A stretch of 64,000 nt of DNA from positions 157,293 to 221,292 of the IMG/VR virus record IMGVR_UViG_3300040801_004034. The stretch is one strand, 5' to 3'. Below are positions 35,846 through 49,628 of this stretch, piece after piece; position 1 is the first letter of the stretch; each line of letters begins with the position of its first letter. Below the pieces are notes generated by a model. That model saw nothing but the letters and a program-made list of their open reading frames with translations. It ran no database searches and was not told where the DNA came from. Position numbers and translations under genes: made by a program.

Positions 35846-38437
35846 GTTACTATTATATGTCTGTTCCATTACCTGATAGCAGCTTTGATATCACCTATAG
35901 TGTTTACACCTTGCTGTGAGTTATCAATAGCGATCACTTCTGTATCGTCTGGTAGTAAAGATGCAATTGGGTTAGTCCATCTCATTCCATTACTACGAAA
36001 AGCTACCTCTTCTACATTATCTGGATCGTTTTTAGTTGGCGCTTTGACTGCAAATGTTGTACTCATATGTATATTATATCAGAGTTCCATTACTTAGCTG
36101 GCGGCCATGTTAGGCCTGCCTCTTGTAGCTTAGGTACATCTTCGTCAGCAATATCGAACTCATCCTGAGTAGTGTAGTTAGCTTGTTGATGCTCTCCTAA
36201 TGTGTCGAAGACCATCTGCTCTGGAATGAACCACCCATAGTCATTACTACTACCTTTAAAGTACACCCTGACCATATTACGGTCATTGATATGATTGACT
36301 GATGCGCTCTTATGCTCTGTGATTTGTATTACCATAATTATCCGATCATGCTTGATGCTCTACACTCTTTGCTTCCTGGACCTGCTTCTGGCGCAGGACA
36401 AACTCTTCTACCTCGTCAGCTCTGATGCTGTACGTCGGTATGTGACGATCATGAAACTCCACTCGATAGAACTCACCTTGTGTGGTTGTTAGCGTGACTT
36501 CTTTTAGCTCGATTGTATTTGCTTTGCTCATGTCGATATTATATCAAGGTTCCATCACAGCATCGGATTGTGCGGAACGTCATTATCTTCTTCCTCACAA
36601 ATCTCGTGATAGGCACATCCTCTTAGTACGCTATTAGCTTTGTACCGAACTGTACCGGTGAATGCTTCTCGCTTTTCCTTCTTGAGTCCAGCTGCTCGAA
36701 CGTATCGTTCAGCTTGCTCCCGGGTGTTAAATGTCGCAACTATCTCTTCTTGTTCTTCAGTCTTGAACTGACCTCCGATATGTGAAAGAAAAACGTGCTC
36801 TGTTATACCTATTAGCTTTACCATGTAATTATTATATCGTGGTTCCGTGAGTGCTAATAAACCGCTACCATACGGTGGCTGAACATTGCAGAGAGCTCTC
36901 TCAGATTGAGTGGCTTCTCAGCGATCGTCAAGAACGCATAACCTTCCAGCTCTTCCTGAACCTCTTCTAAATAAACCTCATCACCTTCCCAATCACCTGA
37001 CTCATCATTGAACGTCACGCGCTCAAACGTCATCAAATTGCTATTGCGATCGAGCGTCATGTCGATGTCTTCGTTCTCGCCTAGGTGCACAAACACCATC
37101 ATATCGTTGCTGCGCATTGCTGGTAATTCATTTTTCATATTCATAACAATATTATATGATGGTTCCAATACGGCTATCCGATCAGTCCGACTGCGTTTGC
37201 AATCATCACTGCTACAAGCACGACAATACCGAACAGTACAACTTTTGCTATTGTTTTGAAGCTCCAACTATTATTTGGTCCAATCATTTTATTTCCCTTT
37301 GTTTTTGTTATTTGTTTATGCAGCAGTCTCTTCTACTAACTGCTCTCCATGAAAGCGTCGTGCCCACACCTCTTTGATATGCTCTTTCTGCTCTCTTGTA
37401 GATGAAAGGGATACGTACTGCAATCGTAGCAGGCGCTTGTAACCGCTAAGGTCTTCTACGATGTTGCCATCACCATCGTGCTGCTTTTCATGACGAACCA
37501 GACCTCGGCCCTTCTTCGAAACATACTCAGCGAGGAACTTCTCGTAACTGTTGTCGTATTTCTTCTCAATCAAGCCAGCTAGATACTTGTGATGGAATGC
37601 ATTTTCCTCACCGGTAACAGTGCACTTGACTTTGACCGTGCAGTTAAAAGCTTGCTTACCATCAGCAAACTCGTAGTTGTATAATTTTTTAGCTTTCTTT
37701 TCCATAATGTTAAACGTCAATTGCAAAGTACATCACCATCGCTGCATAGGCTGCAACTACTGTAATGACTGCTATGTGAATGATTAAATGTTTCATACTG
37801 ATATTATATCGAGGTTCCGAAAAGGTACTCATCATATGCTGCCTCATCAGAAGCTTCATATTCTGCTTTATGTAGTGCAATTTCATAATCTGCTTCATCT
37901 CGCAGAAATTGCGCTGCTTCAGCTGCTTGCCATGTATCAATATATTGATCGCGATCGTGTTCTTCTAGATGTGCCATACCAATATTATATCAGAGTTCCT
38001 AGAGGGAGTTACGTTTAATGCATCCTGCTTGGTACTGAAGACGATCTGTATCTTTCAACCAATTCGCAACGAATGTCTTGAGAGGGTACTCAGCATACAA
38101 TCCATCTTTCCTTCCGCCGATGTGATGAAAGCCATAATGAGCATTCACATCAATACCTTCGCTGGTAAGAAAGTCAAGATGGGTTCCGAGATCCCATTCC
38201 GGATGAATCAGAGTGCTTTGAGCTACCGAAACTTTTGCTAAATCGAATGTCTGTATTTGCGTTTTTATCATACCAATATTATATCAGGGTTCCGAGATGT
38301 GATTAGCACCATACTAGCTGTTCAGCATCAACATCTAGCTTACGAAGATACTCTTCACGTGCATATCGTTCCTGACGAGCCTTCACTTTACGATCGCGCT
38401 CTTCTTGAGCTAGTCGACGAGCTTCCTTCATCCTTAG

Positions 38438-38486
38438 CAACTTGCTCGTTACAAGTAACGAGCAAGTTGAACAACTTGCTCGTTAC
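38438..38486. repeat. 15-bp inverted triplication X-X'-X
   Basis: CAACTTGCTCGTTAC aa GTAACGAGCAAGTTG aa CAACTTGCTCGTTAC. Confidence 0.9.
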
Positions 38487-40161
38487 CAACAATGATCTCA
38501 GCTGCAAGTTCCTCATCGAGCGTCTTCAACCATGCTCGGAACTCCTCGCAATCTTCCTTTGATGTCTTAACGACAGCCCATGCATCGTTAAAGTCAACAC
38601 TCTTATCGAACTTTACGATATGACCAGGGCTGCAACCGCATGAACATCCAGCATTGCGTGAGTAATGAATACTCTTCACATCAGAAAGAATTTCCTTGAT
38701 TGCTGCATTAACTGCACGATTGCACTTGCGAAGAACTTTGTTCCAAGTCTTGCACTTAAAGTCTAGATTATAAATCTTCTTTTCATTGAACCAATCATCT
38801 GCGATCGTCATCACACTTTCTTCCTCTTTAGGTGTCTCAGTGTAGATGACCGCTCGGGTGCTGTGTGAAGGAGCCCAACCATTGCGGCTCTTTGACATCA
38901 TTTTGTTTCGAATTTCTGCTGTGGTGTTATTTTTCATACCAATATTATATCAGGGTTCCAATACGGCGATCAACCTGCGTCCCAACCATATGGCTTGCAA
39001 AGGAACGGCTTACCATCTACATCAACCAGATCACCTACTGATACGCTATACAGAGGACCATCATCAGCTCGGAACTTTTCTTCGAAGCGAGCTTCTTCGC
39101 TGTCCATGTCCATAAAATCACGTGGCTTGTTTGTAGCTGTGAACACCCACTCAGCAGCCTTTTCCTGCTCGACCACTCCGTCTGGAAGATCATACTCAAA
39201 TACTAAGTGGCGAGTTAGGTTATCGAGCTCCTCATCGGTTGCTCCAAATGCTTGGCGTGTGTCGGTTGGTCGGTATAATTTAATTTTCATACTGCGATTA
39301 TATCAGGGTTCCGAGATGTGGCTAGAGTCGAATCTTGATCATCTGTTCCAACCAAGCATGGACCTCTTCAATAGTGTCAGCATCTTCTGCACCTTCAACA
39401 TGATCCATAAACACATCCTCATACCATGTCTCAAAGCTTCCGCTCATCAACAGATTGTAAACGCCTTTTGCAACTTCTTCTGTGGTGTGTGTATCTTTCA
39501 TATTGATATTATATCGAGGTTCCTAGAAGTGATAGAGCGTTGAGCTCTTGTTGTCCTTATCGATGCAATTCGTATGCCAATTGTGCATGTAAGCTGGGGT
39601 ATACTTCTTGCGATGCTCATCGTATTTGTCTTTGCGGCAAATACGCACCTTACCGTAGAAAGTTCCTAGAGCGCCATACCCGCGATCCTTTTGCGTGACT
39701 TTTGTCTTGAACTGTTTGCGATTCTCTTTAAGCCAATCAGTAGCTTCCTTTCTACTCTCAAAGCCAAGATCGTACATGAGGTAGTTCGTATTGCGTCCAG
39801 TGATGCCTTCTGCATAGGCATTTGTATAAGTCATCCAAATAATATATTTCATACAATTATTATATCAGGGTTCCGTGAGGGCTACACACCTGGCAGCTCG
39901 AACTTCACATACCAGTGTGATTGATTTGCGAGCGATGCTCCTCCTCGGAACGGCTTCCATTTATCGCCGGTAGCAAGAATGATTGCTTCTGGGAAAGCTT
40001 TCCTTACTTTCTCCTCGAGCATCTCTGATGTGTACCCATTTCGGTAAAAGTAACCTTTGCGTACTGTAAAGATGCCTTTGCTCTTGCTGACGTGGTTTCC
40101 GATCTTTTCTTCGACTTGACGTGATGTAATTTTCATATGGTTATTATATCGAGGTTCCATG

Positions 40162-40671
40162 CTAGATGTTGTGGATGATCTTACCTGCAATTTTGATCTT
40201 GCGAAGTGATGATATTTTGTAATCACGTTCTGGTATTTCCTTCTCGATGCCTACTGCTTGCTGAGTAGCTGTTGGTGCTGCTTTAGGCAAGAATGGCTTT
40301 AGTTCCGCTAGAGGAATCTCAACTCCAGTCTCCTTATCGATGTAATAAGTTTTGCCGTTCAGCTGTTGAGGCTTGACGCTCAAGTATTGCTCACCTTTAT
40401 GATGAATGATGAAGCGATGTTCCTCATCACGAACACCCCAACGACGAGGCTTAGCTTTGAAAATAGCTTCCTTCCCCTCACGTTCGAGCTGACGATTAAC
40501 GCCTGCTTCGTAGTTAGTTCCGATCAAGCCGCCAACGAATGCAACCTTGATGACGCGTCCAAAGTATGGATTGTTCGTCTTGTTCATGCGAGGCTCGGTA
40601 TGAGCTTCGAATGAGATTGGTGTAGTGCCATTATTGGCATTTTCGATGATGTGGTGTACGATGTTTTTCAT
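40162..40671 (-). CDS. hypothetical early protein
   Basis: 169-aa ORF with own promoter at 40678-40693. Confidence 0.7.
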   Translation of the reverse strand: MKNIVHHIIENANNGTTPISFEAHTEPRMNKTNNPYFGRVIKVAFVGGLIGTNYEAGVNRQLEREGKEAIFKAKPRRWGVRDEEHRFIIHHKGEQYLSVKPQQLNGKTYYIDKETGVEIPLAELKPFLPKAAPTATQQAVGIEKEIPERDYKISSLRKIKIAGKIIHNI

Positions 40672-40912
40672 AATCAGATTATATCTAGGTTCCTAGACGT
40701 CCAGTCTGTATGCTGTAACTACTAGATCATCGATCTCACTCTCTTTCTGAGCAATTTGCTTCTCTAAATAAGCTAGTGCATCATCAGGTGCATCCTTATT
40801 CATCGCAAGTGTATGATAATATTCATGCAAGATGCTCAATTGTGCCTCAGCATGCTCCAATTTTTGTAGTGGTGTCTTTTCCATACCAACATTATATCTA
40901 GGTTCCAAGACA

Positions 40913-40948
40913 TGAAAGGACTCGAGCCACACCACATAACTCGAGTCC
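40913..40948 (-). terminator. probable intrinsic terminator
   Basis: GGACTCGAG-13nt-CTCGAGTCC followed by TTTCA on the minus strand. Confidence 0.5.
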
Positions 40949-42163
40949 CGACCCCCTTGGGTCAACCACCTTTTGCCAACCACGGCACATGAAAATTATT
41001 CTTCCGGTTCCTTAAAAATTTCGTCTTGCTCTCCTGGCAAAAGACCAGTCATAAGAAATTCTCGCTCAGTTGCATTGAGCATCGGAAAGGCTTCCTGAAT
41101 CATCATGCCGTCTTTCCATTTTTTGTTGCACTCGAGAAACTCTTGCGAGCTAATATTGAGATGCATCTCATTTGTTTTGCCTGTCAGTGGATTGGTTTTT
41201 GTGATCTTCATAATGTTATTATATTACTGTTCCGTTTCAGCAAGACGCTCGTTATATTTTGCAAGAATATGATCTTCAACCCTCTTGTATGAACCCCAGC
41301 AACTTGATGGCACATGATTGTAGATGAATACAATGAGCTTTCTGAGCTCATCACTCTCTTGAGGACAATTATCATATCGTCCGTAAGCACCGAAGAGATC
41401 ATTTGCAAGTACTGCATTGATAAACCCTCCTGGCTCATAACCATTCTCGATATAGTCCATCATCGTCTGAGCAAACCGTTTCGGACACTTGTTGTAATCT
41501 ATTTCAAACATATATTATTTTATCAGGGTTCCGTCACCTAAACGTTGTTCGGTCCAGTACCAACTCGATCAGATACTTTATCGAGATAGTCATAAAGGAA
41601 TTCAATTTGCGCTAATCGAGCGAGATCCATATTGTTATCGAGATTCGCTTCGCGTTCGAAACTGTTGAGTTGTTCCTCGAGAGCTTCAAACATATATGTC
41701 ATATGCATCTGACGCTCATCAGTTGACATTTGTTTGTACTTTGTAGTGTATTTAATTTTCTGTGCTTGATTCATACTACGATTATATCAGGGTTCCGAAA
41801 TTAGAACTCCTTCTTAAAGCTGATGCATGTGACTGTTTGGCCGCGCATCCATCGAGCGGAACGATTGATCTCATGATCATATACCTCGAATGTATAAAGC
41901 TCGAATGCTTTGGTGAGCATGTCTTTGATCATGCGCTTTGCTGCATCATCGTAGTTACAATTCGTTTTGATGCGAACTGTTCCGTCTTTGCGTACATCTC
42001 GGAAATAATTTCCTGGTGTAACAGTGCGTGTTGACGCGATTAATACTCGAATGTCTCTAATGGTTGGTGCTGTAATCATACTATTATTATAAGAAGGTTC
42101 CAAGAATGGAAAGCTGCCAGCTCTTTCGAACTGACAGCCCAAGTCGTTTCCGCCCTCCATTCA

Positions 42164-42676
42164 CTAACCGAAATGCGCTGTCAATACTTTGTTCATGCAT
42201 ACTCGAAGTTCCTTCAAGTCAGCAATCAGCGCATCTCGTGAGTAAAGTTCCAATACCTTCACTACATCATGCTTGTACGAATCAAGCTTGCTTACTAGCG
42301 TAGGTTTGTCTTTGATAAAATCGTAGTAGTCACCATCAGCTTTGACTGTTCCGTCTCTCTCGTTGATAGCATACTCCATGTAATTACAGACCTCTTTGTC
42401 ATAACCAAGTACTTCACAAACGGTGTAAATTCGCATGCGATGACTCAGATCGCAATCACCGGTAACAAGTTCCTTAGCAAGGTTGTAACCGGAACGTTTT
42501 GTTGGCCAAGGACCATCTTTTACATATTTAAATGCTCCTTCTTCAACTTCCAAATTGTTCCAGAACTTCCAATGATCGTATGGGTAAGTATTCTCCCATG
42601 CCCCATCGGAGAGCTGCCCGAGAATCTCATGTTCGAAAAGAGCTTTGAGCCGTTTTGGTAATGTCAATATATTCAT
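42164..42676 (-). CDS. hypothetical early protein
   Basis: 170-aa ORF; promoter at 42712-42727. Confidence 0.7.
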   Translation of the reverse strand: MNILTLPKRLKALFEHEILGQLSDGAWENTYPYDHWKFWNNLEVEEGAFKYVKDGPWPTKRSGYNLAKELVTGDCDLSHRMRIYTVCEVLGYDKEVCNYMEYAINERDGTVKADGDYYDFIKDKPTLVSKLDSYKHDVVKVLELYSRDALIADLKELRVCMNKVLTAHFG

Positions 42677-42950
42677 AATGTGTGCGGTTGTTATTGCTTA
42701 ATTGCAACTATATTATAAAAGGGTTCCGTTCTGGCTAACCCCTAAATTGATGCAAGTAGCACGATACCTAAACCGATTGCGAGGCCGATTAGCCAGCTAC
42801 CTAGCAAGGCACCTATGCAAGTTAAAAAGGCGACAAATGCGAGAGCGTTTGGATTAATATTCATAATGTGTTCCGTGTTCTAGATAATGTTTAATTGTTC
42901 CTGCTTCCTCTTCATCGATGCAGTGACTGATTAAAGGATCTATAATCATT

Positions 42951-43064
42951 TGTTCAATACAGGAACGTTCCTGTTCCAGTTCCGTGGCGGCGGCTATTAC
43001 CCTTACTGCCGCCGCCACTTGTTCTATCTGTTCCTGTTCCACTAAACGTTCCAGTTCCAGTTCC
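42951..43064. repeat. cluster of 8 GGAAC boxes flanking an 11-bp GC hairpin
   Basis: minus strand GGAACT GGAACT GGAACG..GGAACA GGAACA..GTGGCGGCGGC-13nt-GCCGCCGCCAC GGAACT GGAACA GGAACGTTCCTGT. Confidence 0.85.
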
Positions 43065-43425
43065 TACACTCGTTGTGGATCGAAAATATGGAACACTGTC
43101 ACTTGTGTGTTCCGCATAATATCACTCACATTATACTTCGGGTCATCTTTCAAGGAACTGATGCCAAACCCTCGCAGGTATTGAGAGATTGCCAATGTGT
43201 GGCCAGCTGTAACAACTGCACTGACATTCAATCGTGATAGTTCCTCTACTACCTTCTCGAGGATCGATAACGGAACAACCTTCTCGATCTTAATACGATA
43301 CCGACCATCTTGATGACGATCATTATAATGAGTAACACAAGTCAAATCGACTCCATGTTTCTCAATTGCATTGCGAACTTCTTTATATGTGATGTTTTTC
43401 ATATCGATATTATAAAAGGGTTCCA

Positions 43426-43950
43426 TTACGCTGCAATCAGCTCTCTAACAATCAGCTTGCCGAGAGTTTCATGCTTCTTTCCGATCATGTACCGATCTCT
43501 GTTGATCTTGTTGAGCTGGAACCCTTTTGGTATGCGAGCTTTTTTCGCATAGATGACTCCTGTTTCAACATTCATGATAGCATATAAGAGCTTTTTACGA
43601 CTGCGAGCAACAACATGTTCTGTAATATCTGTTTTGCCATTTGCAAGACGTGTAGGAGATGCTCCAATTTCTCTACAGATGCGCTTCCAACGATAGTCAT
43701 GCCTGCAGCATTCACCATGACGATGATAAGCAAGTGCGTGAGCGATCTCATGCAGCATCGTATCGAGAACCTCTTCCTCTTTACCAACACGGCACAATGT
43801 TTGATTGATTGCGAGAGTGCGATCGCGGTAGCGGCATTGACCGTATGTACGATAAGCACTCTTCTTTAGCAACCGCGGGCGCCATCCATGTTTGTCGAGG
43901 CCGTGCTGCTCAATTAACTTTCTGTACGTTGTTAGTGGTGTCATCATCAT
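43426..43950 (-). CDS. SprT-like zinc metalloprotease (start revised)
   Basis: YGQC, DTMLHEIAHA, HDYRWKRICREIGA; promoter at 43957-43972. Confidence 0.85.
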   Translation of the reverse strand: MMMTPLTTYRKLIEQHGLDKHGWRPRLLKKSAYRTYGQCRYRDRTLAINQTLCRVGKEEEVLDTMLHEIAHALAYHRHGECCRHDYRWKRICREIGASPTRLANGKTDITEHVVARSRKKLLYAIMNVETGVIYAKKARIPKGFQLNKINRDRYMIGKKHETLGKLIVRELIAA

Positions 43951-43996
43951 ACTACGATTATATCTGGGTTCCAAAAAGGCAAAACCATTTAAGATC

Positions 43997-44157
43997 ATCG
44001 CAAATCTCTATAGAGGCGAGCCGCTAAGCTCGGGTTTTAACCCCTCAGTATCAGTAGGTCGATGCAGTCACCTATCATCAGCTTTAATTTAAAGACGAGC
44101 TGGTTCGATTGCGTCTCCATCCGCGTTTAGGGTCTGTGATGGGTTCGACCTTGCGAT
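43997..44157 (-). ncRNA. candidate 161-nt structured ncRNA with own early promoter
   Basis: promoter 44163-44178 not followed by ATG; 5' ATCGCAA pairs with 3' TTGCGAT; internal stems AGGTCGA/TCGACCT, CCATC/GATGG, AGACG/CGTCT, GAGG/CCTC, CGAGC/GCTCG. Confidence 0.7.
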
Positions 44158-44423
44158 AAATTATTGTATCAGTGTTCCTATTCAACAACTGCTTCAATGC
44201 CATGATCAACTGCTTCACTGACCTTAACACCATTACGCATATGGTTAAGAGCAATCTGCTGCGCTTTGTTCATCTGTGTTAGTGTTAGCACAACAGCAAA
44301 GTCATTGCGTGCAACTTGTTCAATTGTCTGTAGGCTGGCGTCTCTAATTTTCATACGGTTATTATATTGTGGTTCCATGCACATATTTAATGTGAACAAC
44401 CGATTAAATATGCATCCATAATA

Positions 44424-44681
44424 TTATCGATTAGTTGCGAAGCGAGGAACAAAGCAGTTCTCAACCACTCCAGTTCGGCGGTTCATGTTTGTGACAATAC
44501 CACAAATGTCATGCATAAATTCAACTCGTGGAGCTTCATGTAAACGCTCCCAATTCATTCCCATATCATCTGCATTGAGCAGATCCATGACAAGTGTCAT
44601 GCGGTCAATTTTGATGCCCATCTCGGTGAATTCATCTTCAGCGCGATCAGCTACTTTGGTCATTATTTCTAGTGGTCTCAT
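44424..44681 (-). CDS. DUF6874-like small phage protein
   Basis: MDL...FMHDICGI...NCFVPRFA. Confidence 0.55.
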   Translation of the reverse strand: MRPLEIMTKVADRAEDEFTEMGIKIDRMTLVMDLLNADDMGMNWERLHEAPRVEFMHDICGIVTNMNRRTGVVENCFVPRFATNR

Positions 44682-45829
44682 ACTCAGATTATAAGAAGGT
44701 TCCTACCTGTGCTTGACTGCTAATGTAACACTTGCATGATAGTTACAAGGCATGACCTGTACGCTATGTACATTAACTGGCTCGGAAAGTTCCATCCATT
44801 GCTGTAATGCTGGAACTAAATCTTCATTTGGATCATCCCATGTACCTGTATTGATATCAAAGCTGATGTTCACGCTTCTAATTTCGCGATTAGGCTTAGG
44901 TAGTTCTATTTCCTTACCTTGTTCAAAGCGAAGACCATAGCATGATTGCGAAGCAAGAGCAATTGCGATGTCAGCAACATGACCTTTAAATGTTCCAAGC
45001 TGCTTAGTAGTGCGACCTTCACAGTCACCTTCTGTTGTAACCTTCCATATACCTTCTGGAGGACCGACAGTGTCTTGCATTTTGTTCCAGATATCACGCT
45101 GTCGTTCGACAGCACTATCTCGGCGTTTAAGTTCCTGAGCTAGCTGCTCAGATGTAAATTGTTTAAGGCTATCCATATTAGCCTACGATCTTATATTCGT
45201 CGCGCATGCTATCTGCTAATGACATCTTGACCGACTTAAGAGTGATGCCCGGAACTTTGCATAGTGCATATTCTTCACGTGCACGTTCGGTCACAAGCTT
45301 GTTAAATTCTTTCTGTGTGATGGTTGTTTTCATAAGTGGTATGTTAAGAGGGTTCCATTATGGCTCTTTACGAAGAGATGGATGACATGTCTCATTAAAG
45401 CCTTCAAACCATGCAGCATTTTCGAGCTCATTTTGTTCGACCTTCTTAGTCATCTCTGGTGTATCATGTCTTCTATGACCTAAACGAAATGGTCCACCTG
45501 GTGTGTAATCCCAGTTCTCAGAACCATCAAACTTAAGACCGGTCAGGCGACCATCTTTGTATGCTTTAATGTTTGATTTCATGTCGCTATGTTAAGAGGG
45601 TTCCAAGATTAATCATCACCGAATAAGTTGTCATTGTCCCATTGATCACAAGCACGAACTAGATCAGTGATGACCTGCTCACGACCAACATTGAATGCGA
45701 AGCGAATGAATGTTAAACACCCATGATCATATACACCTGGTATGTTCCGGCCGCGTGCTTCAGCGAGTGATTCGATTGCTTGTTCGTATGTGATTGTTTT
45801 CATGCCTCTAGTATAGAGAGGTTCCAATC

Positions 45830-47050
45830 CAGCTCAGAACGGAACAGTGATATAATATGTGTACAGCCAGATCGTGTCGTGAGCGAAATGCAGAGCCCGA
45901 GGGGTTGGCGAGAACTCCCTTGAGATATGGACCTGCTCCATCTCGGAAAAAAGGAACTGTGATATAATTGATGTGCTCCACCTACCTGCCTAACAAGGAT
46001 TGCCGGGATGGAAGGAGCAGAGATCTAGAGCTAGAGAGCAAACTACTCACCCTAGAGCGGAAAAGACCGGATGGGTTGCTAATGAAGAGTTTATAGGCCC
46101 CCACGCCTAGGCGGATCCAAACGGTCCAGCTATGCTTCTCTATAGAAATCCAGCTAAAAATGCTGGTAATGCGCCAGGTGCATAGGGAGTTAGAAGATTC
46201 TAACTTCAGGGTCGCCCGTCCGGATTCTCGCCCGGGTGAATTTACGCCCGTTTTGCCGCTCTGTAACTCGTTGAGAGGGTATGAGTTTACAGCCGATCCT
46301 GGCACGTAGTTCTGGAACCATGATATACTAGTGTTTTAATTTAACAGTGAGATAGCAGCCATGTAATAGATACACATAATAATATACGTAGACGTGCATA
46401 TGAAGCGCTATATATGAAGCGCTTAGGGCTCTCCGAGAGCCACGTAAGGATATATACGTGGGGTAATAATAAATGCCCGGGATAGCCAGGACGAATCTGC
46501 TATTGCAAGCGGGCTCAACTTGTGCGTATAGCTAGAAAGGAACACCTGCGCGGGAGATCGCGAGAGAAAGTGCGGGAGAGATAGCGCGCAGTGCGATAAG
46601 AGAGCGAGCGCGGGTGGGAGGGAGAAAATTTGAGCGGGAGACCTAACCAAATACCCGCTTAGATTCTATCATTTCCGTGCCCTCATATACCTCTCCTCAC
46701 ATAACCCTCTTGACTTTTCATACCTTGCTTAGCCTCTCCTCTAGGCTATTGCTCACATCAACAACAACCCTGCATCCATCATTAGTAGATATTACATTCA
46801 CACTTATATGTTCATCCTCTATCTCCACACCATGATTTTTCATCATGCTCTTTACCCTCTCTTTTATACCGCTTTTAAAATTATCATCTACCATTTTATT
46901 ACTCTTTCTATTAGTATTGTTATTGATGTTACTATTTCTAATATTACTCTTTCTATTGTTATTAGTATTGTTGTTATTAATACCCTGCGGGTGGGCTCAT
47001 TTCCTTCACTGGTGAGATATCGGGCTGTATACTAATGCCATTCCAGTTCC
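45830..47050. other. 1.2-kb non-coding region: candidate origin or genome-terminus region
   Basis: three plus-strand GGAAC promoters (45841, 45953, 46314); ATATGAAGCGCT x2; G/purine-rich GCGGGAGA repeats switching to a pyrimidine-rich tract near 46650; AT-rich ATTACTCTTTCTATT x2. Confidence 0.5.
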
Positions 47051-49628
47051 AAAAATACTTCCACACATCTTTCTCTTTTCTACACCATATCAATACCATA
47101 ATTATACTTCAGTTCCTTTTTGTATACACCATCCACACACCATCTCTTTTACTCAATGAAACACATTCAAACAACATCTTACCATTCACAATTTCATATG
47201 GTACGCCAGCTACAATAAGTATTGCACATACTTCATCCTCAGTCAAGTCACAAACATATTCCTTTTTACATGCTTGTTCACACATATTTAAAATGCTTTT
47301 AATATCATCAATCTTCATTATATTACCCAGATAATCTTTTTGTTTTAATTAAACCATTTGTATCTCTATAAACCATGAACCGGTGTGTTACAACAATACC
47401 AAATCTCACACTATTATACACTCTATATGATCCACACTTAGTCTGTGTGAAATCAAATTCAGCAATTGCATGCTTTGGTACAATAATTAGTCTCTTGTTA
47501 TCATCTCTATAATGGTATTCATCTGTGTATTCCACCACATGCTCTGATTTTGGATTACATAACCCCCAGTGACGCAAGTTACCTATGAATACATTTTGTG
47601 TTTGTATCCAGTGGTCTTGACCAATAATCTTAATCTTTACAGTCAGCTTGTGTACATCTTTACGCTGAACTTCATAGAACCTGTGTTTAAAAAATTGTTT
47701 GATCTTATTCATCCACCGGAACATAATATGTTTCAACTACTGTGCGGGTGCGCTGCTCTACCACCTTGGCACCATCCAATATTTCGCACGGCATAACACA
47801 ATCATACCAATCATTATCACCATCTGCATGTACCTGGTAAAAGCTCACGAACACATCACATAACTTAGCAACCTTTGGTGTGATTGAATACCATCTATGA
47901 TTATCTGTCTCACCATTAGTCACTGATTCAGTTTCAAACATCAGCATAGATGCTAGACCCTCATCACTACACACTTCATTTTCTAATTCAAAATGTTTCT
48001 TTATCAGTTCTCTTATATTCATAATTGTATTATACCTCTGTTCCTTTTTCCTCAATATGCTTCTTCACTATCCACAGATCATCACCTATTTGTCTTAACC
48101 ATTAACTCTTATGTGCTTACTATTATTTTCCAGTATTTCTACCATGTATCTTCATTACTTCGCGGAAGCTCCTCTGTCTAATTCTCTTGTTCTACTATAC
48201 TCTCTCATGGAACCCCTGGTGGGAACAGCTATTATTCATCAACCCATAGCAAAATATCGATGATACACATGATACACACATAAAACCAAATAATAATATA
48301 TATCCAACCTTCTACTAAATTAATAGTAGGATCATCTGAGATGAAGTCAGGTTTTGAATAACATAACAATACCATTACAGCAAGTGTATAAAGAATATTA
48401 GTTTTCATAATTAACCTAACGTACAACTTAACCCGATAAGGAACCATCCGATAATACCTAACATATACACTGTCCCAGCAGCGCTATCATCTGCATCGCT
48501 CAGTGGTTTTTTATCAAGCAATGATGATAATGAGATTGTAACATGAAATGTTAGTGCCCAAATCAGAAGGGGTATAAAATTGATTATATCCATCACTTAT
48601 TATAAGGTTGTTCCTTCTTACATTCACTTGCTGGTACTACTTTTCTGAATCTCTACATATAATATATATGCTACAATTTCGTTCATAGTGTTGGGAGCTC
48701 CCATCCATCCTCGTTCATGATGTCGGCGGCTTCTTTGGCACCGGCTTGTGAGGTGAATAATGATGTAAGATCTTGTGAAAGAATATGGGGACCAGCACAC
48801 CGGAGGCGGTGGCGGGAATCGAACCAGATGGAATACCGAGAGTAAGTTGCTTCATGCTTCGCATTCATCTCCATAGCCAGCGAGTAGTATCGCTGGTAGA
48901 AGGTGAAGAACTTGGAAGCTTGTTCGGCAGCATTTCGGGTTGGGAAGGTTCTACCAGCTCTTGGGTGATGAGGGCGGTCGCCAGCACTGTGACAGATCCA
49001 ACCATTATAGGTAACTGTATACATACCACCTTTCGGATCCCATGGTGTGACCGGATCAGGTGTTTCTTTAATAATCCTGTTAATTTGAGCTTTAACTGAA
49101 GCAATACGTTCAGTCTGACGAGCAGACTCTTTTGTAAGTTCACCTAGCTGTTCTAATAGTACTTTCATTTCATCTTTCATAATTAATAATTCCTTTCACA
49201 ACCATTAAAGATTATATTGTTACAATCTTGGTTTTCATGCTCTACTTGATTGTATGCATAGTGTTCTTCATCACCATTTTTGTATTGAGCCTCTATTGAG
49301 ACACTCATTTCTGTCCCATCATCATACTCGACCGTGAAATGATATGAATATTCATCTTCTCTATTTTTCATCTTGTGTAAAATATACAAATTCTGTTATT
49401 GGTTTATTGGTATCCTCATCAATTATTAATATCCAATCACCTAAACCTTGCTCGAAATGTTCGTTTTTAATTTCATTACGGATATATTCATCCATTGCTA
49501 CTGTATACATTATAACAGCAATAACCATAATCGGAAGCGATCCCATCTGTGTGCTTTCTGCACCAGCACATGCTAAGATAACAAAGAATATCATACTAAA
49601 AATAAAAAGAAATAACATCATAACAACA

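What the first reader, a model, noticed from the sequence alone, without database searches (positions are those of the whole stretch)
43997..44178. A promoter cassette that carries a structured ncRNA instead of a gene
Seen: GGAAC-ACTGA-TACAAT is followed at the usual ATG position by ATCGCAA, which pairs with TTGCGAT 161 nt later. Inside are AGGTCGA/TCGACCT enclosing the CCATC/GATGG and AGACG/CGTCT stems, and a GAGG/CCTC junction with GGTT/AACC and CGAGC/GCTCG arms. Inference: an early phage small RNA (decoy, anti-defence or regulatory) that I cannot assign to a known family.
Basis: partly seen in the sequence, partly recalled or inferred. Interest (0 to 1): 0.72.

Follow-up and report, generated by a model that had tools for sequence, protein, structure and literature searches.

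The report
Gene-less phage promoter cassette, RNA unproven
In a T4-like phage from a microbial mat, one copy of the phage's standard promoter is followed by about 185 bases with no gene, so it should make an untranslated RNA, but the proposed fold is barely better than chance and nothing yet shows a discrete or conserved small RNA.

Summary
The window is the last 64 kb of a 221-kb T4-like phage genome assembled from a microbial-mat metagenome. The motif at 44178-44163 (- strand) is a true copy of the phage's promoter cassette, GGAAC-N5-TA(T/C)AAT. The window holds 50 copies against 1.6 expected. In 38 of 62 copies genome-wide an ATG lies exactly 6 nt after the -10 box, which implies leaderless mRNAs.

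This is the only cassette in the dense 35.8-44.7 kb array with no ORF behind it. The stretch 44162-43973 has stops in all frames and only a 26-codon ATG frame with no ribosome-binding site. Transcription here should therefore give an untranslated RNA.

- z is -1.3 to -1.7 against shuffles.
- After correcting for GC, 40% of same-size windows in the phage fold as well.

Only the closure of the 5' end, 13 nt in two long-range helices, stands out. None of 300 shuffles reach it, but 3 of 46 other natural cassettes come close.

No terminator follows, so the transcript should run into the SprT-like gene. I found no Rfam family, tRNA, paralogue or homologue, and no laid metatranscriptome contig. The flanking genes are orphans as well, so covariation cannot be tested. 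A discrete functional small RNA remains possible, at about 0.3.

The parts
44163..44178 (-). Promoter cassette GGAAC-ACTGA-TACAAT. It has the rarer TACAAT form of the -10 box. The first G is also the last base of the upstream gene's TAG stop.
43997..44157 (-). 161-nt ORF-free stretch, the putative untranslated RNA. RNA position p corresponds to window coordinate 44158-p. GC is 0.49.
44151..44157 (-). 5' arm of closing helix P1 (ATCGCAA), which starts at the predicted transcription start.
   Evidence: (pair probability 0.35-1.0, with the five central pairs at 0.9-1.0)
43997..44003 (-). 3' arm of closing helix P1 (TTGCGAT).
44145..44150 (-). 5' arm of P2 (GGTCGA), which pairs with 44057-44062.
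   Evidence: pair probability about 0.74
44057..44062 (-). 3' arm of P2 (TCGACC).
44017..44032 (-). The most robust local hairpin, CGAGC-loop-GCTCG.
   Evidence: pair probability 0.99 for four of its pairs
44037..44120 (-). The only ATG frame inside the stretch: 26 codons plus a stop, with no Shine-Dalgarno sequence, and not at the 5' end.
43973..43996 (-). 24-nt U-rich linker between the element and the next cassette. It can form only a weak hairpin (-4.6 kcal/mol) and is not a terminator.
43957..43972 (-). The next cassette, GGAACCCAGATATAAT, with ATG 6 nt after it.
43426..43950 (-). SprT-like metalloprotease gene (174 aa). A transcript from 44178 would run into it.
44178..44354 (-). Upstream 58-aa orphan gene, driven by cassette 44376-44361.

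Best explanation
This is an orphan, gene-less copy of the phage's standard promoter cassette.

Shown:
- The motif is a full member of a highly over-represented promoter-like cassette.
- That cassette normally sits 6 nt before the ATG of a small gene, which implies leaderless mRNAs.
- Here no gene follows for about 185 nt.
- No terminator-like site lies before the next cassette.

Inferred:
- The cassette is read by the host RNA polymerase. Searches of the phage for a sigma-70 region 2 domain and for a MotA domain found nothing, but the MotA search was uninformative because its control also rang nowhere.
- Transcription starts at about A44157 and makes an untranslated RNA that continues into the SprT-like gene.
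- That gene would then have two tandem promoters: a distal one giving a long-leader mRNA, and a proximal one giving a leaderless mRNA.
- The spacer most likely arose by loss or replacement of an ORF during the modular shuffling typical of such arrays.
- Its fold is not demonstrably selected. Only the sequestration of the first 13 nt in two long-range helices rises above shuffled controls.
For: - The cassette is real: 50 copies in the window against 1.6 expected, and 38 of 62 genome-wide have ATG at a fixed 6-nt spacing.
- It is the only ORF-free cassette in the compact array. Every other gap holds a plausible ORF except one 96-nt gap before cassette 40906, which holds a terminator-like hairpin instead.
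- Stops occur in all three frames, and the only ATG frame is 26 codons with no ribosome-binding site.
- No terminator-like site lies in 43900-44200.
- Tandem cassettes and cassettes with untranslated leaders of 10 to about 150 nt occur elsewhere in this phage and in related contigs.
- Folding energy is at background level.
- The phage shows no sigma-70 region 2 domain and no MotA hit. The MotA control was uninformative.
Against: - The array is so compact, with stop codons overlapping the next promoter, that a useless 185-nt spacer is unexpected.
- The first 13 nt are paired long-range more strongly than in any of 300 shuffles.
- The phage is rich in RNA genes. Cassettes stand upstream of the tRNA cluster, and three tandem cassettes stand just upstream of a GOLLD RNA, which suggests that the cassette also drives non-coding RNA genes.
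- Read-through into the SprT-like gene is inferred only from the lack of a terminator motif. No transcript data exist.
Confidence: 0.45

Rival explanations
1. It is a discrete small RNA of about 160 nt. It is made from its own promoter, its 5' and 3' ends are locked in a 7-bp helix (P1) stacked on a 6-bp helix (P2), it is released by processing rather than termination, and it acts in trans as a decoy, sponge or regulator.
For: - It is the only ORF-free cassette in a very compact array.
- P1 and P2 have pair probabilities of about 0.74-1.0 for most pairs, but 0.35-0.65 for the end pairs of P1. The 5'-end closure beats 300 of 300 shuffles.
- GC is 0.49, in the upper range of the region.
- The same phage encodes 38-39 tRNAs, a tmRNA and a GOLLD RNA, and has cassettes upstream of these RNA genes.
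Against: - The overall fold is no better than background.
- Comparable 5' closure occurs in 3 of 46 other natural cassettes.
- There is no terminator.
- There is no Rfam or tRNA-like signal even at E<=10.
- No RNA contig from the same sample could be laid on it.
- There are no homologues. This is uninformative, because the neighbouring genes have none either.
Confidence: 0.3
2. It is a structured cis-acting 5' leader that controls the SprT-like gene on transcripts from the distal promoter, for example by alternative pairing of the 3' arm of P1.
For: - There is no terminator, so the leader and the SprT-like ORF would share one transcript.
- UUGCG of the 3' arm can pair with CGCAA at either RNA position 3-7 or 45-49 (read from the sequence).
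- A short conserved leader hairpin is used after another cassette in this phage group, so leaders can be functional.
Against: - No riboswitch or leader family matched.
- The SprT-like gene has its own cassette and leaderless start 24 nt after the element.
- The fold is not significant overall.
Confidence: 0.12
3. It encodes a micro-protein, the 26-codon ATG frame at 44120-44037.
For: The frame exists, and some internal genes of the array also lack clear Shine-Dalgarno sequences.
Against: The frame is not at the 5' end and has no ribosome-binding motif. Its ATG lies inside a predicted hairpin (the GATGG arm). A frame of this length is expected by chance in 185 nt.
Confidence: 0.05
4. It is a DNA-level element, for example repeated protein-binding sites, or tRNA-derived debris on the + strand.
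For: CGCAA(GG)TCGAACC occurs twice and GCATCGACC once. GGTTCGA on the + strand is the T-loop word of the phage's tRNA genes.
Against: The internal repeat is not significant, as 63 of 300 shuffles score as high. ARAGORN and Rfam found no tRNA-like signal on either strand. There is no paralogue in the genome.
Confidence: 0.05

Closest known systems
PeSL (promoter-early stem-loop) regulatory cassettes of T4-type phages (Arbiol et al. 2010, PMC2839356; Comeau et al. 2014, PMC4122927)
   Same: A short, highly repeated early-promoter motif flanks each small orphan gene in a variable region of a T4-like genome. Such arrays are reshuffled module by module, which can leave odd units. One unit here, at 40960-40906, has a strong hairpin plus a T-run directly before the cassette, as in a PeSL.
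   Different: Most cassettes here have no stem-loop, because the stop codon overlaps the promoter. The motif is GGAAC-N5-TATAAT with the ATG fixed 6 nt downstream, implying leaderless mRNAs. The term 'leaderless' does not occur in the 2010 paper. Shuffling at this particular site is inferred, not shown.
Small stable RNAs C and D of phage T4 (recalled from the T4 literature, not tested here)
   Same: They are non-coding RNAs of about 120-140 nt and unknown function in a T4-type phage.
   Different: The T4 RNAs lie in the tRNA cluster and are processed from the tRNA precursor. This element lies about 58 kb from the tRNA cluster, among early-type orphan genes, and has no tRNA-like signal.
GOLLD RNA (Rfam RF02032), present in this same phage
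   Same: It is a promoter-cassette-associated non-coding RNA in the same genome. It suggests that the cassette also drives RNA genes.
   Different: GOLLD is a large, ornate, widely conserved RNA that scores 179 bits here. The 161-nt element matches no family and has no homologue.

Membership tests
This phage's promoter cassette (GGAAC-N5-TATAAT) | Match to the motif, on the same strand as the array | tested here: met
   0 mismatches to GGAAC-N5-TACAAT at 44178-44163(-). 50 copies in the window against 1.57 expected.
This phage's promoter cassette (GGAAC-N5-TATAAT) | ATG start codon 6 nt (rarely 5) after the -10 box, followed by an ORF | tested here: not met
   AATTT-ATC-GCA follows the box, and the first ATG-started ORF of 35 aa or more begins 164 nt downstream.
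PeSL cassettes of T4-type phages | Terminator stem-loop immediately upstream of the early promoter | tested here: not met
   The upstream gene's TAG overlaps GGAAC, leaving no room for a hairpin. A PeSL-like unit does exist at 40960-40906.
PeSL cassettes of T4-type phages | Repeated motif flanking orphan genes in a variable region of a T4-like genome | tested here: met
   T4-type portal and gp15. About 25 cassettes lie in 35.8-44.7 kb. The neighbouring genes have no homologues in related contigs.
Any Rfam family (4227 models) | Covariance-model score at or above the gathering threshold | tested here: not met
   No hit at gathering threshold in the window. At E<=10 there were only 9-16-bit snoRNA-model noise hits.
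tRNA / tRNA-like element | Cloverleaf detected by ARAGORN or by the Rfam tRNA model | tested here: not met
   0 tRNAs in the window. No tRNA hit at E<=10. The same tools find 38-39 tRNAs elsewhere in the genome.
Independently terminated bacterial/phage sRNA | Intrinsic terminator (GC-rich hairpin plus U-run) at the 3' end | tested here: not met
   No terminator-like site in 43900-44200. The best 3' hairpin is -4.6 kcal/mol.
Structured ncRNA in general | Folding energy clearly below shuffled and genomic background | tested here: not met
   z is -1.33 to -1.66. The GC-corrected residual is z -0.2.
Structured ncRNA in general | Covariation in homologues | not testable with these tools
   No homologue in 137+ loci, 36 related viral records, or the metagenome and genome scans. 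All other copies are the same phage at 100% identity.
RNA anti-CRISPR (solitary repeat mimic) | Near-identity of a hairpin segment to a host CRISPR repeat, seen as arrays in genomes | tested here: inconclusive
   Two exact 20-mers were scanned against 185,579 species genomes. One gave no hit and the other gave two single chance hits, with no arrays. A single mismatch would hide a true relation.

The most novel reading that the evidence does not exclude
The element is the first member of a new class of early small RNAs in a deep-branching, RNA-rich T4-like phage lineage. It would be a ~160-nt RNA with its 5' and 3' ends closed by a 7+6-bp junction, released by processing from leaderless-type early transcripts, and acting in trans on a host or phage factor.
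Probability: 0.27. Interest if true: 0.55.

Novelty: new member of a known kind. Interest (0 to 1): 0.3.

Why it matters
If the RNA proves discrete and functional, it would add a small RNA to an uncultured T4-like lineage that already carries unusually many RNA genes: 38-39 tRNAs, a tmRNA, a GOLLD RNA and a group I intron. It would also be a handle on what early phage RNAs do. As it stands, the value is mainly negative and contextual: hand-drawn stems in a 160-nt gap are not evidence of structure. The more notable feature is the array itself, in which dozens of promoters are fused to start codons at a fixed 6-nt spacing. That implies leaderless early mRNAs in a T4-like phage.

Tried and rejected
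- **Rfam.** Gathering threshold and E<=10 gave nothing meaningful.
- **ARAGORN.** No tRNA or tmRNA in the window.
- **Similarity to isolated phages.** DNA similarity: none. The portal is only about 31% identical to cyanophage and vibriophage portals.
- **Paralogues in the phage's own genome.** blastn-short and tblastx found none.
- **Synteny through the SprT-like protein.** The nearest relatives are 40% identical and sit in unrelated contexts.
- **Synteny through the 157-aa upstream protein.** Homologues of about 45% identity lie in phages that do not use this cassette, and the covariance model found nothing there.
- **Other contigs carrying the flanking genes.** They are the same phage from the same study, 100% identical across the element wherever they reach it (four of five loci), so there are no variants to analyse.
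- **Relatives found through the portal and the cassette motif.** I searched 36 viral records with the single-sequence covariance model R1, which scores 214.6 bits on itself, and with nhmmer. There were no hits.
- **Exact-word and motif-pair scans.** An 18-mer gave three chance hits in coding DNA of unrelated viral contigs. The metagenome scans gave none. The species-genome scans gave none, then two single chance hits.
- **RNA evidence.** Three metatranscriptome runs from the same sample exist, but none of their Logan contigs lies on 41500-47400. Raw reads were not available, so this is not evidence of absence.
- **Pseudogene reading.** Rejected as a recent event. The frame starting at ATC has three stops in 54 codons, about the random expectation (read from the sequence).
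- **Internal direct repeat as iterons.** Not significant.
- **Cassettes with long leaders in relatives (L031, L042, L059, L113).** They show no similarity to this element.

Full report
**Context.** The window is bases 157,293-221,292 of a 221,292-bp viral record. It encodes a T4-type portal (gp20 family, E 4e-97), a gp15-like tail protein, and DNA and RNA ligases. The DNA comes from a microbial-mat metagenome. The portal is only about 31% identical to those of isolated cyanophages and vibriophages, so this is a deep-branching, uncultured T4-like phage.

**The cassette.** GGAAC-N5-TATAAT, allowing one mismatch, occurs 50 times in the window against 1.57 expected, almost always on the - strand. 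Genome-wide, 38 of 62 copies have ATG exactly 6 nt after the -10 box. That is where transcription would start, so these look like leaderless mRNAs. In the dense array between 35.8 and 44.7 kb, the stop codon of one small gene typically overlaps or abuts the next cassette, at distances of -15 to +10 nt. Searches of the phage for a sigma-70 region 2 domain and for a MotA domain found nothing. The MotA control was uninformative. I infer that the host polymerase reads the cassette.

**The observation.** The cassette at 44178-44163(-) is a perfect match with the rarer TACAAT -10 box. What follows is AATTT-ATCGCAA. ATC sits one base earlier than the usual ATG position. No ORF follows. All three frames carry stops. 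The only ATG frame is 26 codons (44120-44037), has no ribosome-binding motif, and starts inside a predicted hairpin. The next cassette (43972-43957) drives a 174-aa SprT-like gene. The other gaps of the array contain plausible ORFs of 40-129 aa, apart from one 96-nt gap before cassette 40906 that holds a terminator-like hairpin. This is therefore the only gene-less cassette there. That part of the finding is real and unusual.

**The stems.** All the listed complementary words are present, with three caveats:
- A7 is used twice.
- GGTT/AACC would enclose a 2-nt loop.

In the ensemble, P1 (RNA 1-7 with 155-161) has pair probabilities of 0.35-1.0, with its five central pairs at 0.9-1.0. P2 (8-13 with 96-101) has about 0.74, and the CGAGC hairpin 0.99. 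CCATC/GATGG has 0.49, AGACG/CGTCT 0.13 and GAGG/CCTC 0.07.

**Is the fold more than chance?**
- Against dinucleotide shuffles, z is -1.66 for 171 nt and -1.33 for 161 nt. The two sub-domains give -1.08 and -0.59.
- I folded 1596 windows of 161 nt along the - strand, which is mostly coding. After regressing on GC, the element's residual is z -0.2, and 40% of windows fold as well.
- A perfect 7-mer reverse complement 40-260 nt downstream exists at 2.3% of random genome positions. Two hits arose in 244 cassette-by-offset tests.
- One feature is above the shuffles. The first 13 nt are paired with mean probability 0.91, and 0.86 with partners more than 60 nt away. One and none of 300 shuffles reach these values.
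- Among the 47 natural cassettes of the window, three others score 0.70-0.89. The empirical p is therefore about 0.05-0.08, and the feature was chosen after the fact.

**Known families.** No Rfam family reaches its gathering score. At E<=10 only 9-16-bit snoRNA-model noise appears. ARAGORN finds nothing in the window. The same tools find 38-39 tRNAs, a tmRNA, a GOLLD RNA (179 bits; gathering score 150) and a group I intron elsewhere in the genome. The tools work on this phage, and the phage is rich in RNA genes. Cassettes stand upstream of the tRNA cluster, and three tandem cassettes stand just upstream of the GOLLD RNA. This suggests the cassette can drive non-coding genes.

**Homologues.** None were found.
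- The element has no paralogue in the genome.
- The SprT-like and 157-aa neighbours have only distant homologues (40-45% identity) in unrelated contexts.
- Other contigs with the same genes are the same phage, identical across the element wherever they reach it.
- Relatives that share the portal (62-64% identity) or the cassette architecture were collected from IMG/VR.
- Neither nhmmer nor a single-sequence covariance model (214.6 bits on itself) found anything in 36 such records or in about 160 loci.
- Exact-word scans of the viral, metagenome and species-genome collections gave nothing or single chance hits.
- The neighbouring protein genes are equally without homologues in these relatives. 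Absence here therefore says nothing about function. It only means that covariation cannot be tested.

**Expression.** Three metatranscriptomic runs from the same sample exist. None of their assembled contigs lies on 41500-47400, while the DNA run covers the stretch at word depth 45. Contigs drop rare transcripts, so this is not evidence of absence.

**3' end.** No terminator-like site lies between the cassette and the SprT-like gene. The best hairpin in the 24-nt linker is -4.6 kcal/mol. A transcript from 44178 should therefore run through the next cassette into the SprT-like gene. Tandem cassettes and cassettes with leaders of 10 to about 150 nt occur elsewhere in this phage and in relatives.

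**Interpretation.** Shown: a real promoter cassette, no gene behind it, no known RNA family, no terminator, and no exceptional folding energy. Inferred: an untranslated transcript that starts at about 44157 and reads into the SprT-like gene.
- I put 0.45 on the reading that this is an orphan cassette. Its spacer is a leftover of module shuffling of the kind described for PeSL arrays in T4-type phages (PMC2839356, PMC4122927), and it now acts at most as a distal promoter with a long leader.
- I put 0.30 on a discrete, processed, trans-acting small RNA.
- I put 0.12 on a structured cis-regulatory leader.
- I put about 0.05 each on a micro-protein and on a DNA-level element.

The compactness of the array, the 5'-end closure and the RNA-rich genome keep the small-RNA reading alive. 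The background-level fold and the missing terminator keep it from being the favourite.

**Verdict.** The feature is a new member of a known kind, the regulatory promoter cassettes of T4-type variable regions. It carries an unproven claim to be a small RNA gene. Interest is 0.3.

Noticed in passing
window-wide, e.g. 35852-44703 (- strand); genome-wide in G000: Leaderless architecture. In 38 of 62 cassettes the ATG lies exactly 6 nt after the TATAAT box, and stop codons often overlap the next GGAAC. The same GGAAC-N5-TATAAT-N6-ATG unit recurs several times per contig in many IMG/VR contigs. This would be an unusual early-gene design for a T4-like phage. One literature search found no description of it.
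   Followed up: partly
G000:C1:143025-143472 (+), outside the window (L161:19025-19472): A GOLLD RNA (RF02032, 179 bits, gathering score 150) with a tRNA nested in it. It lies just downstream of three tandem cassettes at 142401, 142455 and 142597.
   Followed up: partly
G000:C1:125549-143167 (+), outside the window: A cluster of 38-39 tRNA genes plus a tmRNA with tag GENQLMAA. One tRNA has anticodon CUA, an amber-suppressor type, at 138150-138226. Many early ORFs nevertheless end in TAG. From memory, tags starting with GE- are typical of Bacteroidota, which is a possible host clue. This was not tested.
   Followed up: no
G000:C1:73701-73910 (-), outside the window (L165:13701-13910): A group I catalytic intron (RF00028, 112 bits).
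   Followed up: no
window 45841-46700 (+ strand): Two cassettes point the other way (45841 and 45953, + strand), into a GC-rich stretch of about 850 nt with no convincing ORF. The segment 45863-46310(+) folds with z -2.33, and 0 of 100 shuffles fold as well. Its first 95 nt or so share a conserved block (ACTCCCTTGAG, then GGACCT) with the equivalent divergent cassette at the end of related contig L128. It has no Rfam match. This is a better candidate for a novel structured RNA than the assigned element.
   Followed up: partly
window 42711-42677 (-); L128:13918-13893 (-); L038 near 5719 (-): A 17-nt leader, ATAGTTGCAATTAAGCA (hairpin UUGC-AAUUAA-GCAA), follows the cassette directly in three related phages, in at least two of them before ORFs that show no similarity to each other. 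This suggests a conserved RNA operator or processing site.
   Followed up: partly
window 40960-40891 (-): A 9-bp GC-rich hairpin (GGACTCGAG ... CTCGAGTCC) and a T-run lie directly before cassette 40906. This terminator-plus-promoter unit is built like a PeSL.
   Followed up: no
window 46897-46979: An AT-rich imperfect direct repeat of about 38 nt has two best copies 45 nt apart (84% identity), next to the divergent-promoter region. It may be a coding low-complexity repeat or iteron-like.
   Followed up: no
window 43998 and the N-termini of several listed ORFs: Automatic ORF calls run through the cassettes and give false N-terminal extensions of the form (M)EPxYN, which is the translation of GGAACC..TATAAT. 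An example is the 190-aa call for the SprT-like gene, whose real start is 43950.
   Followed up: yes
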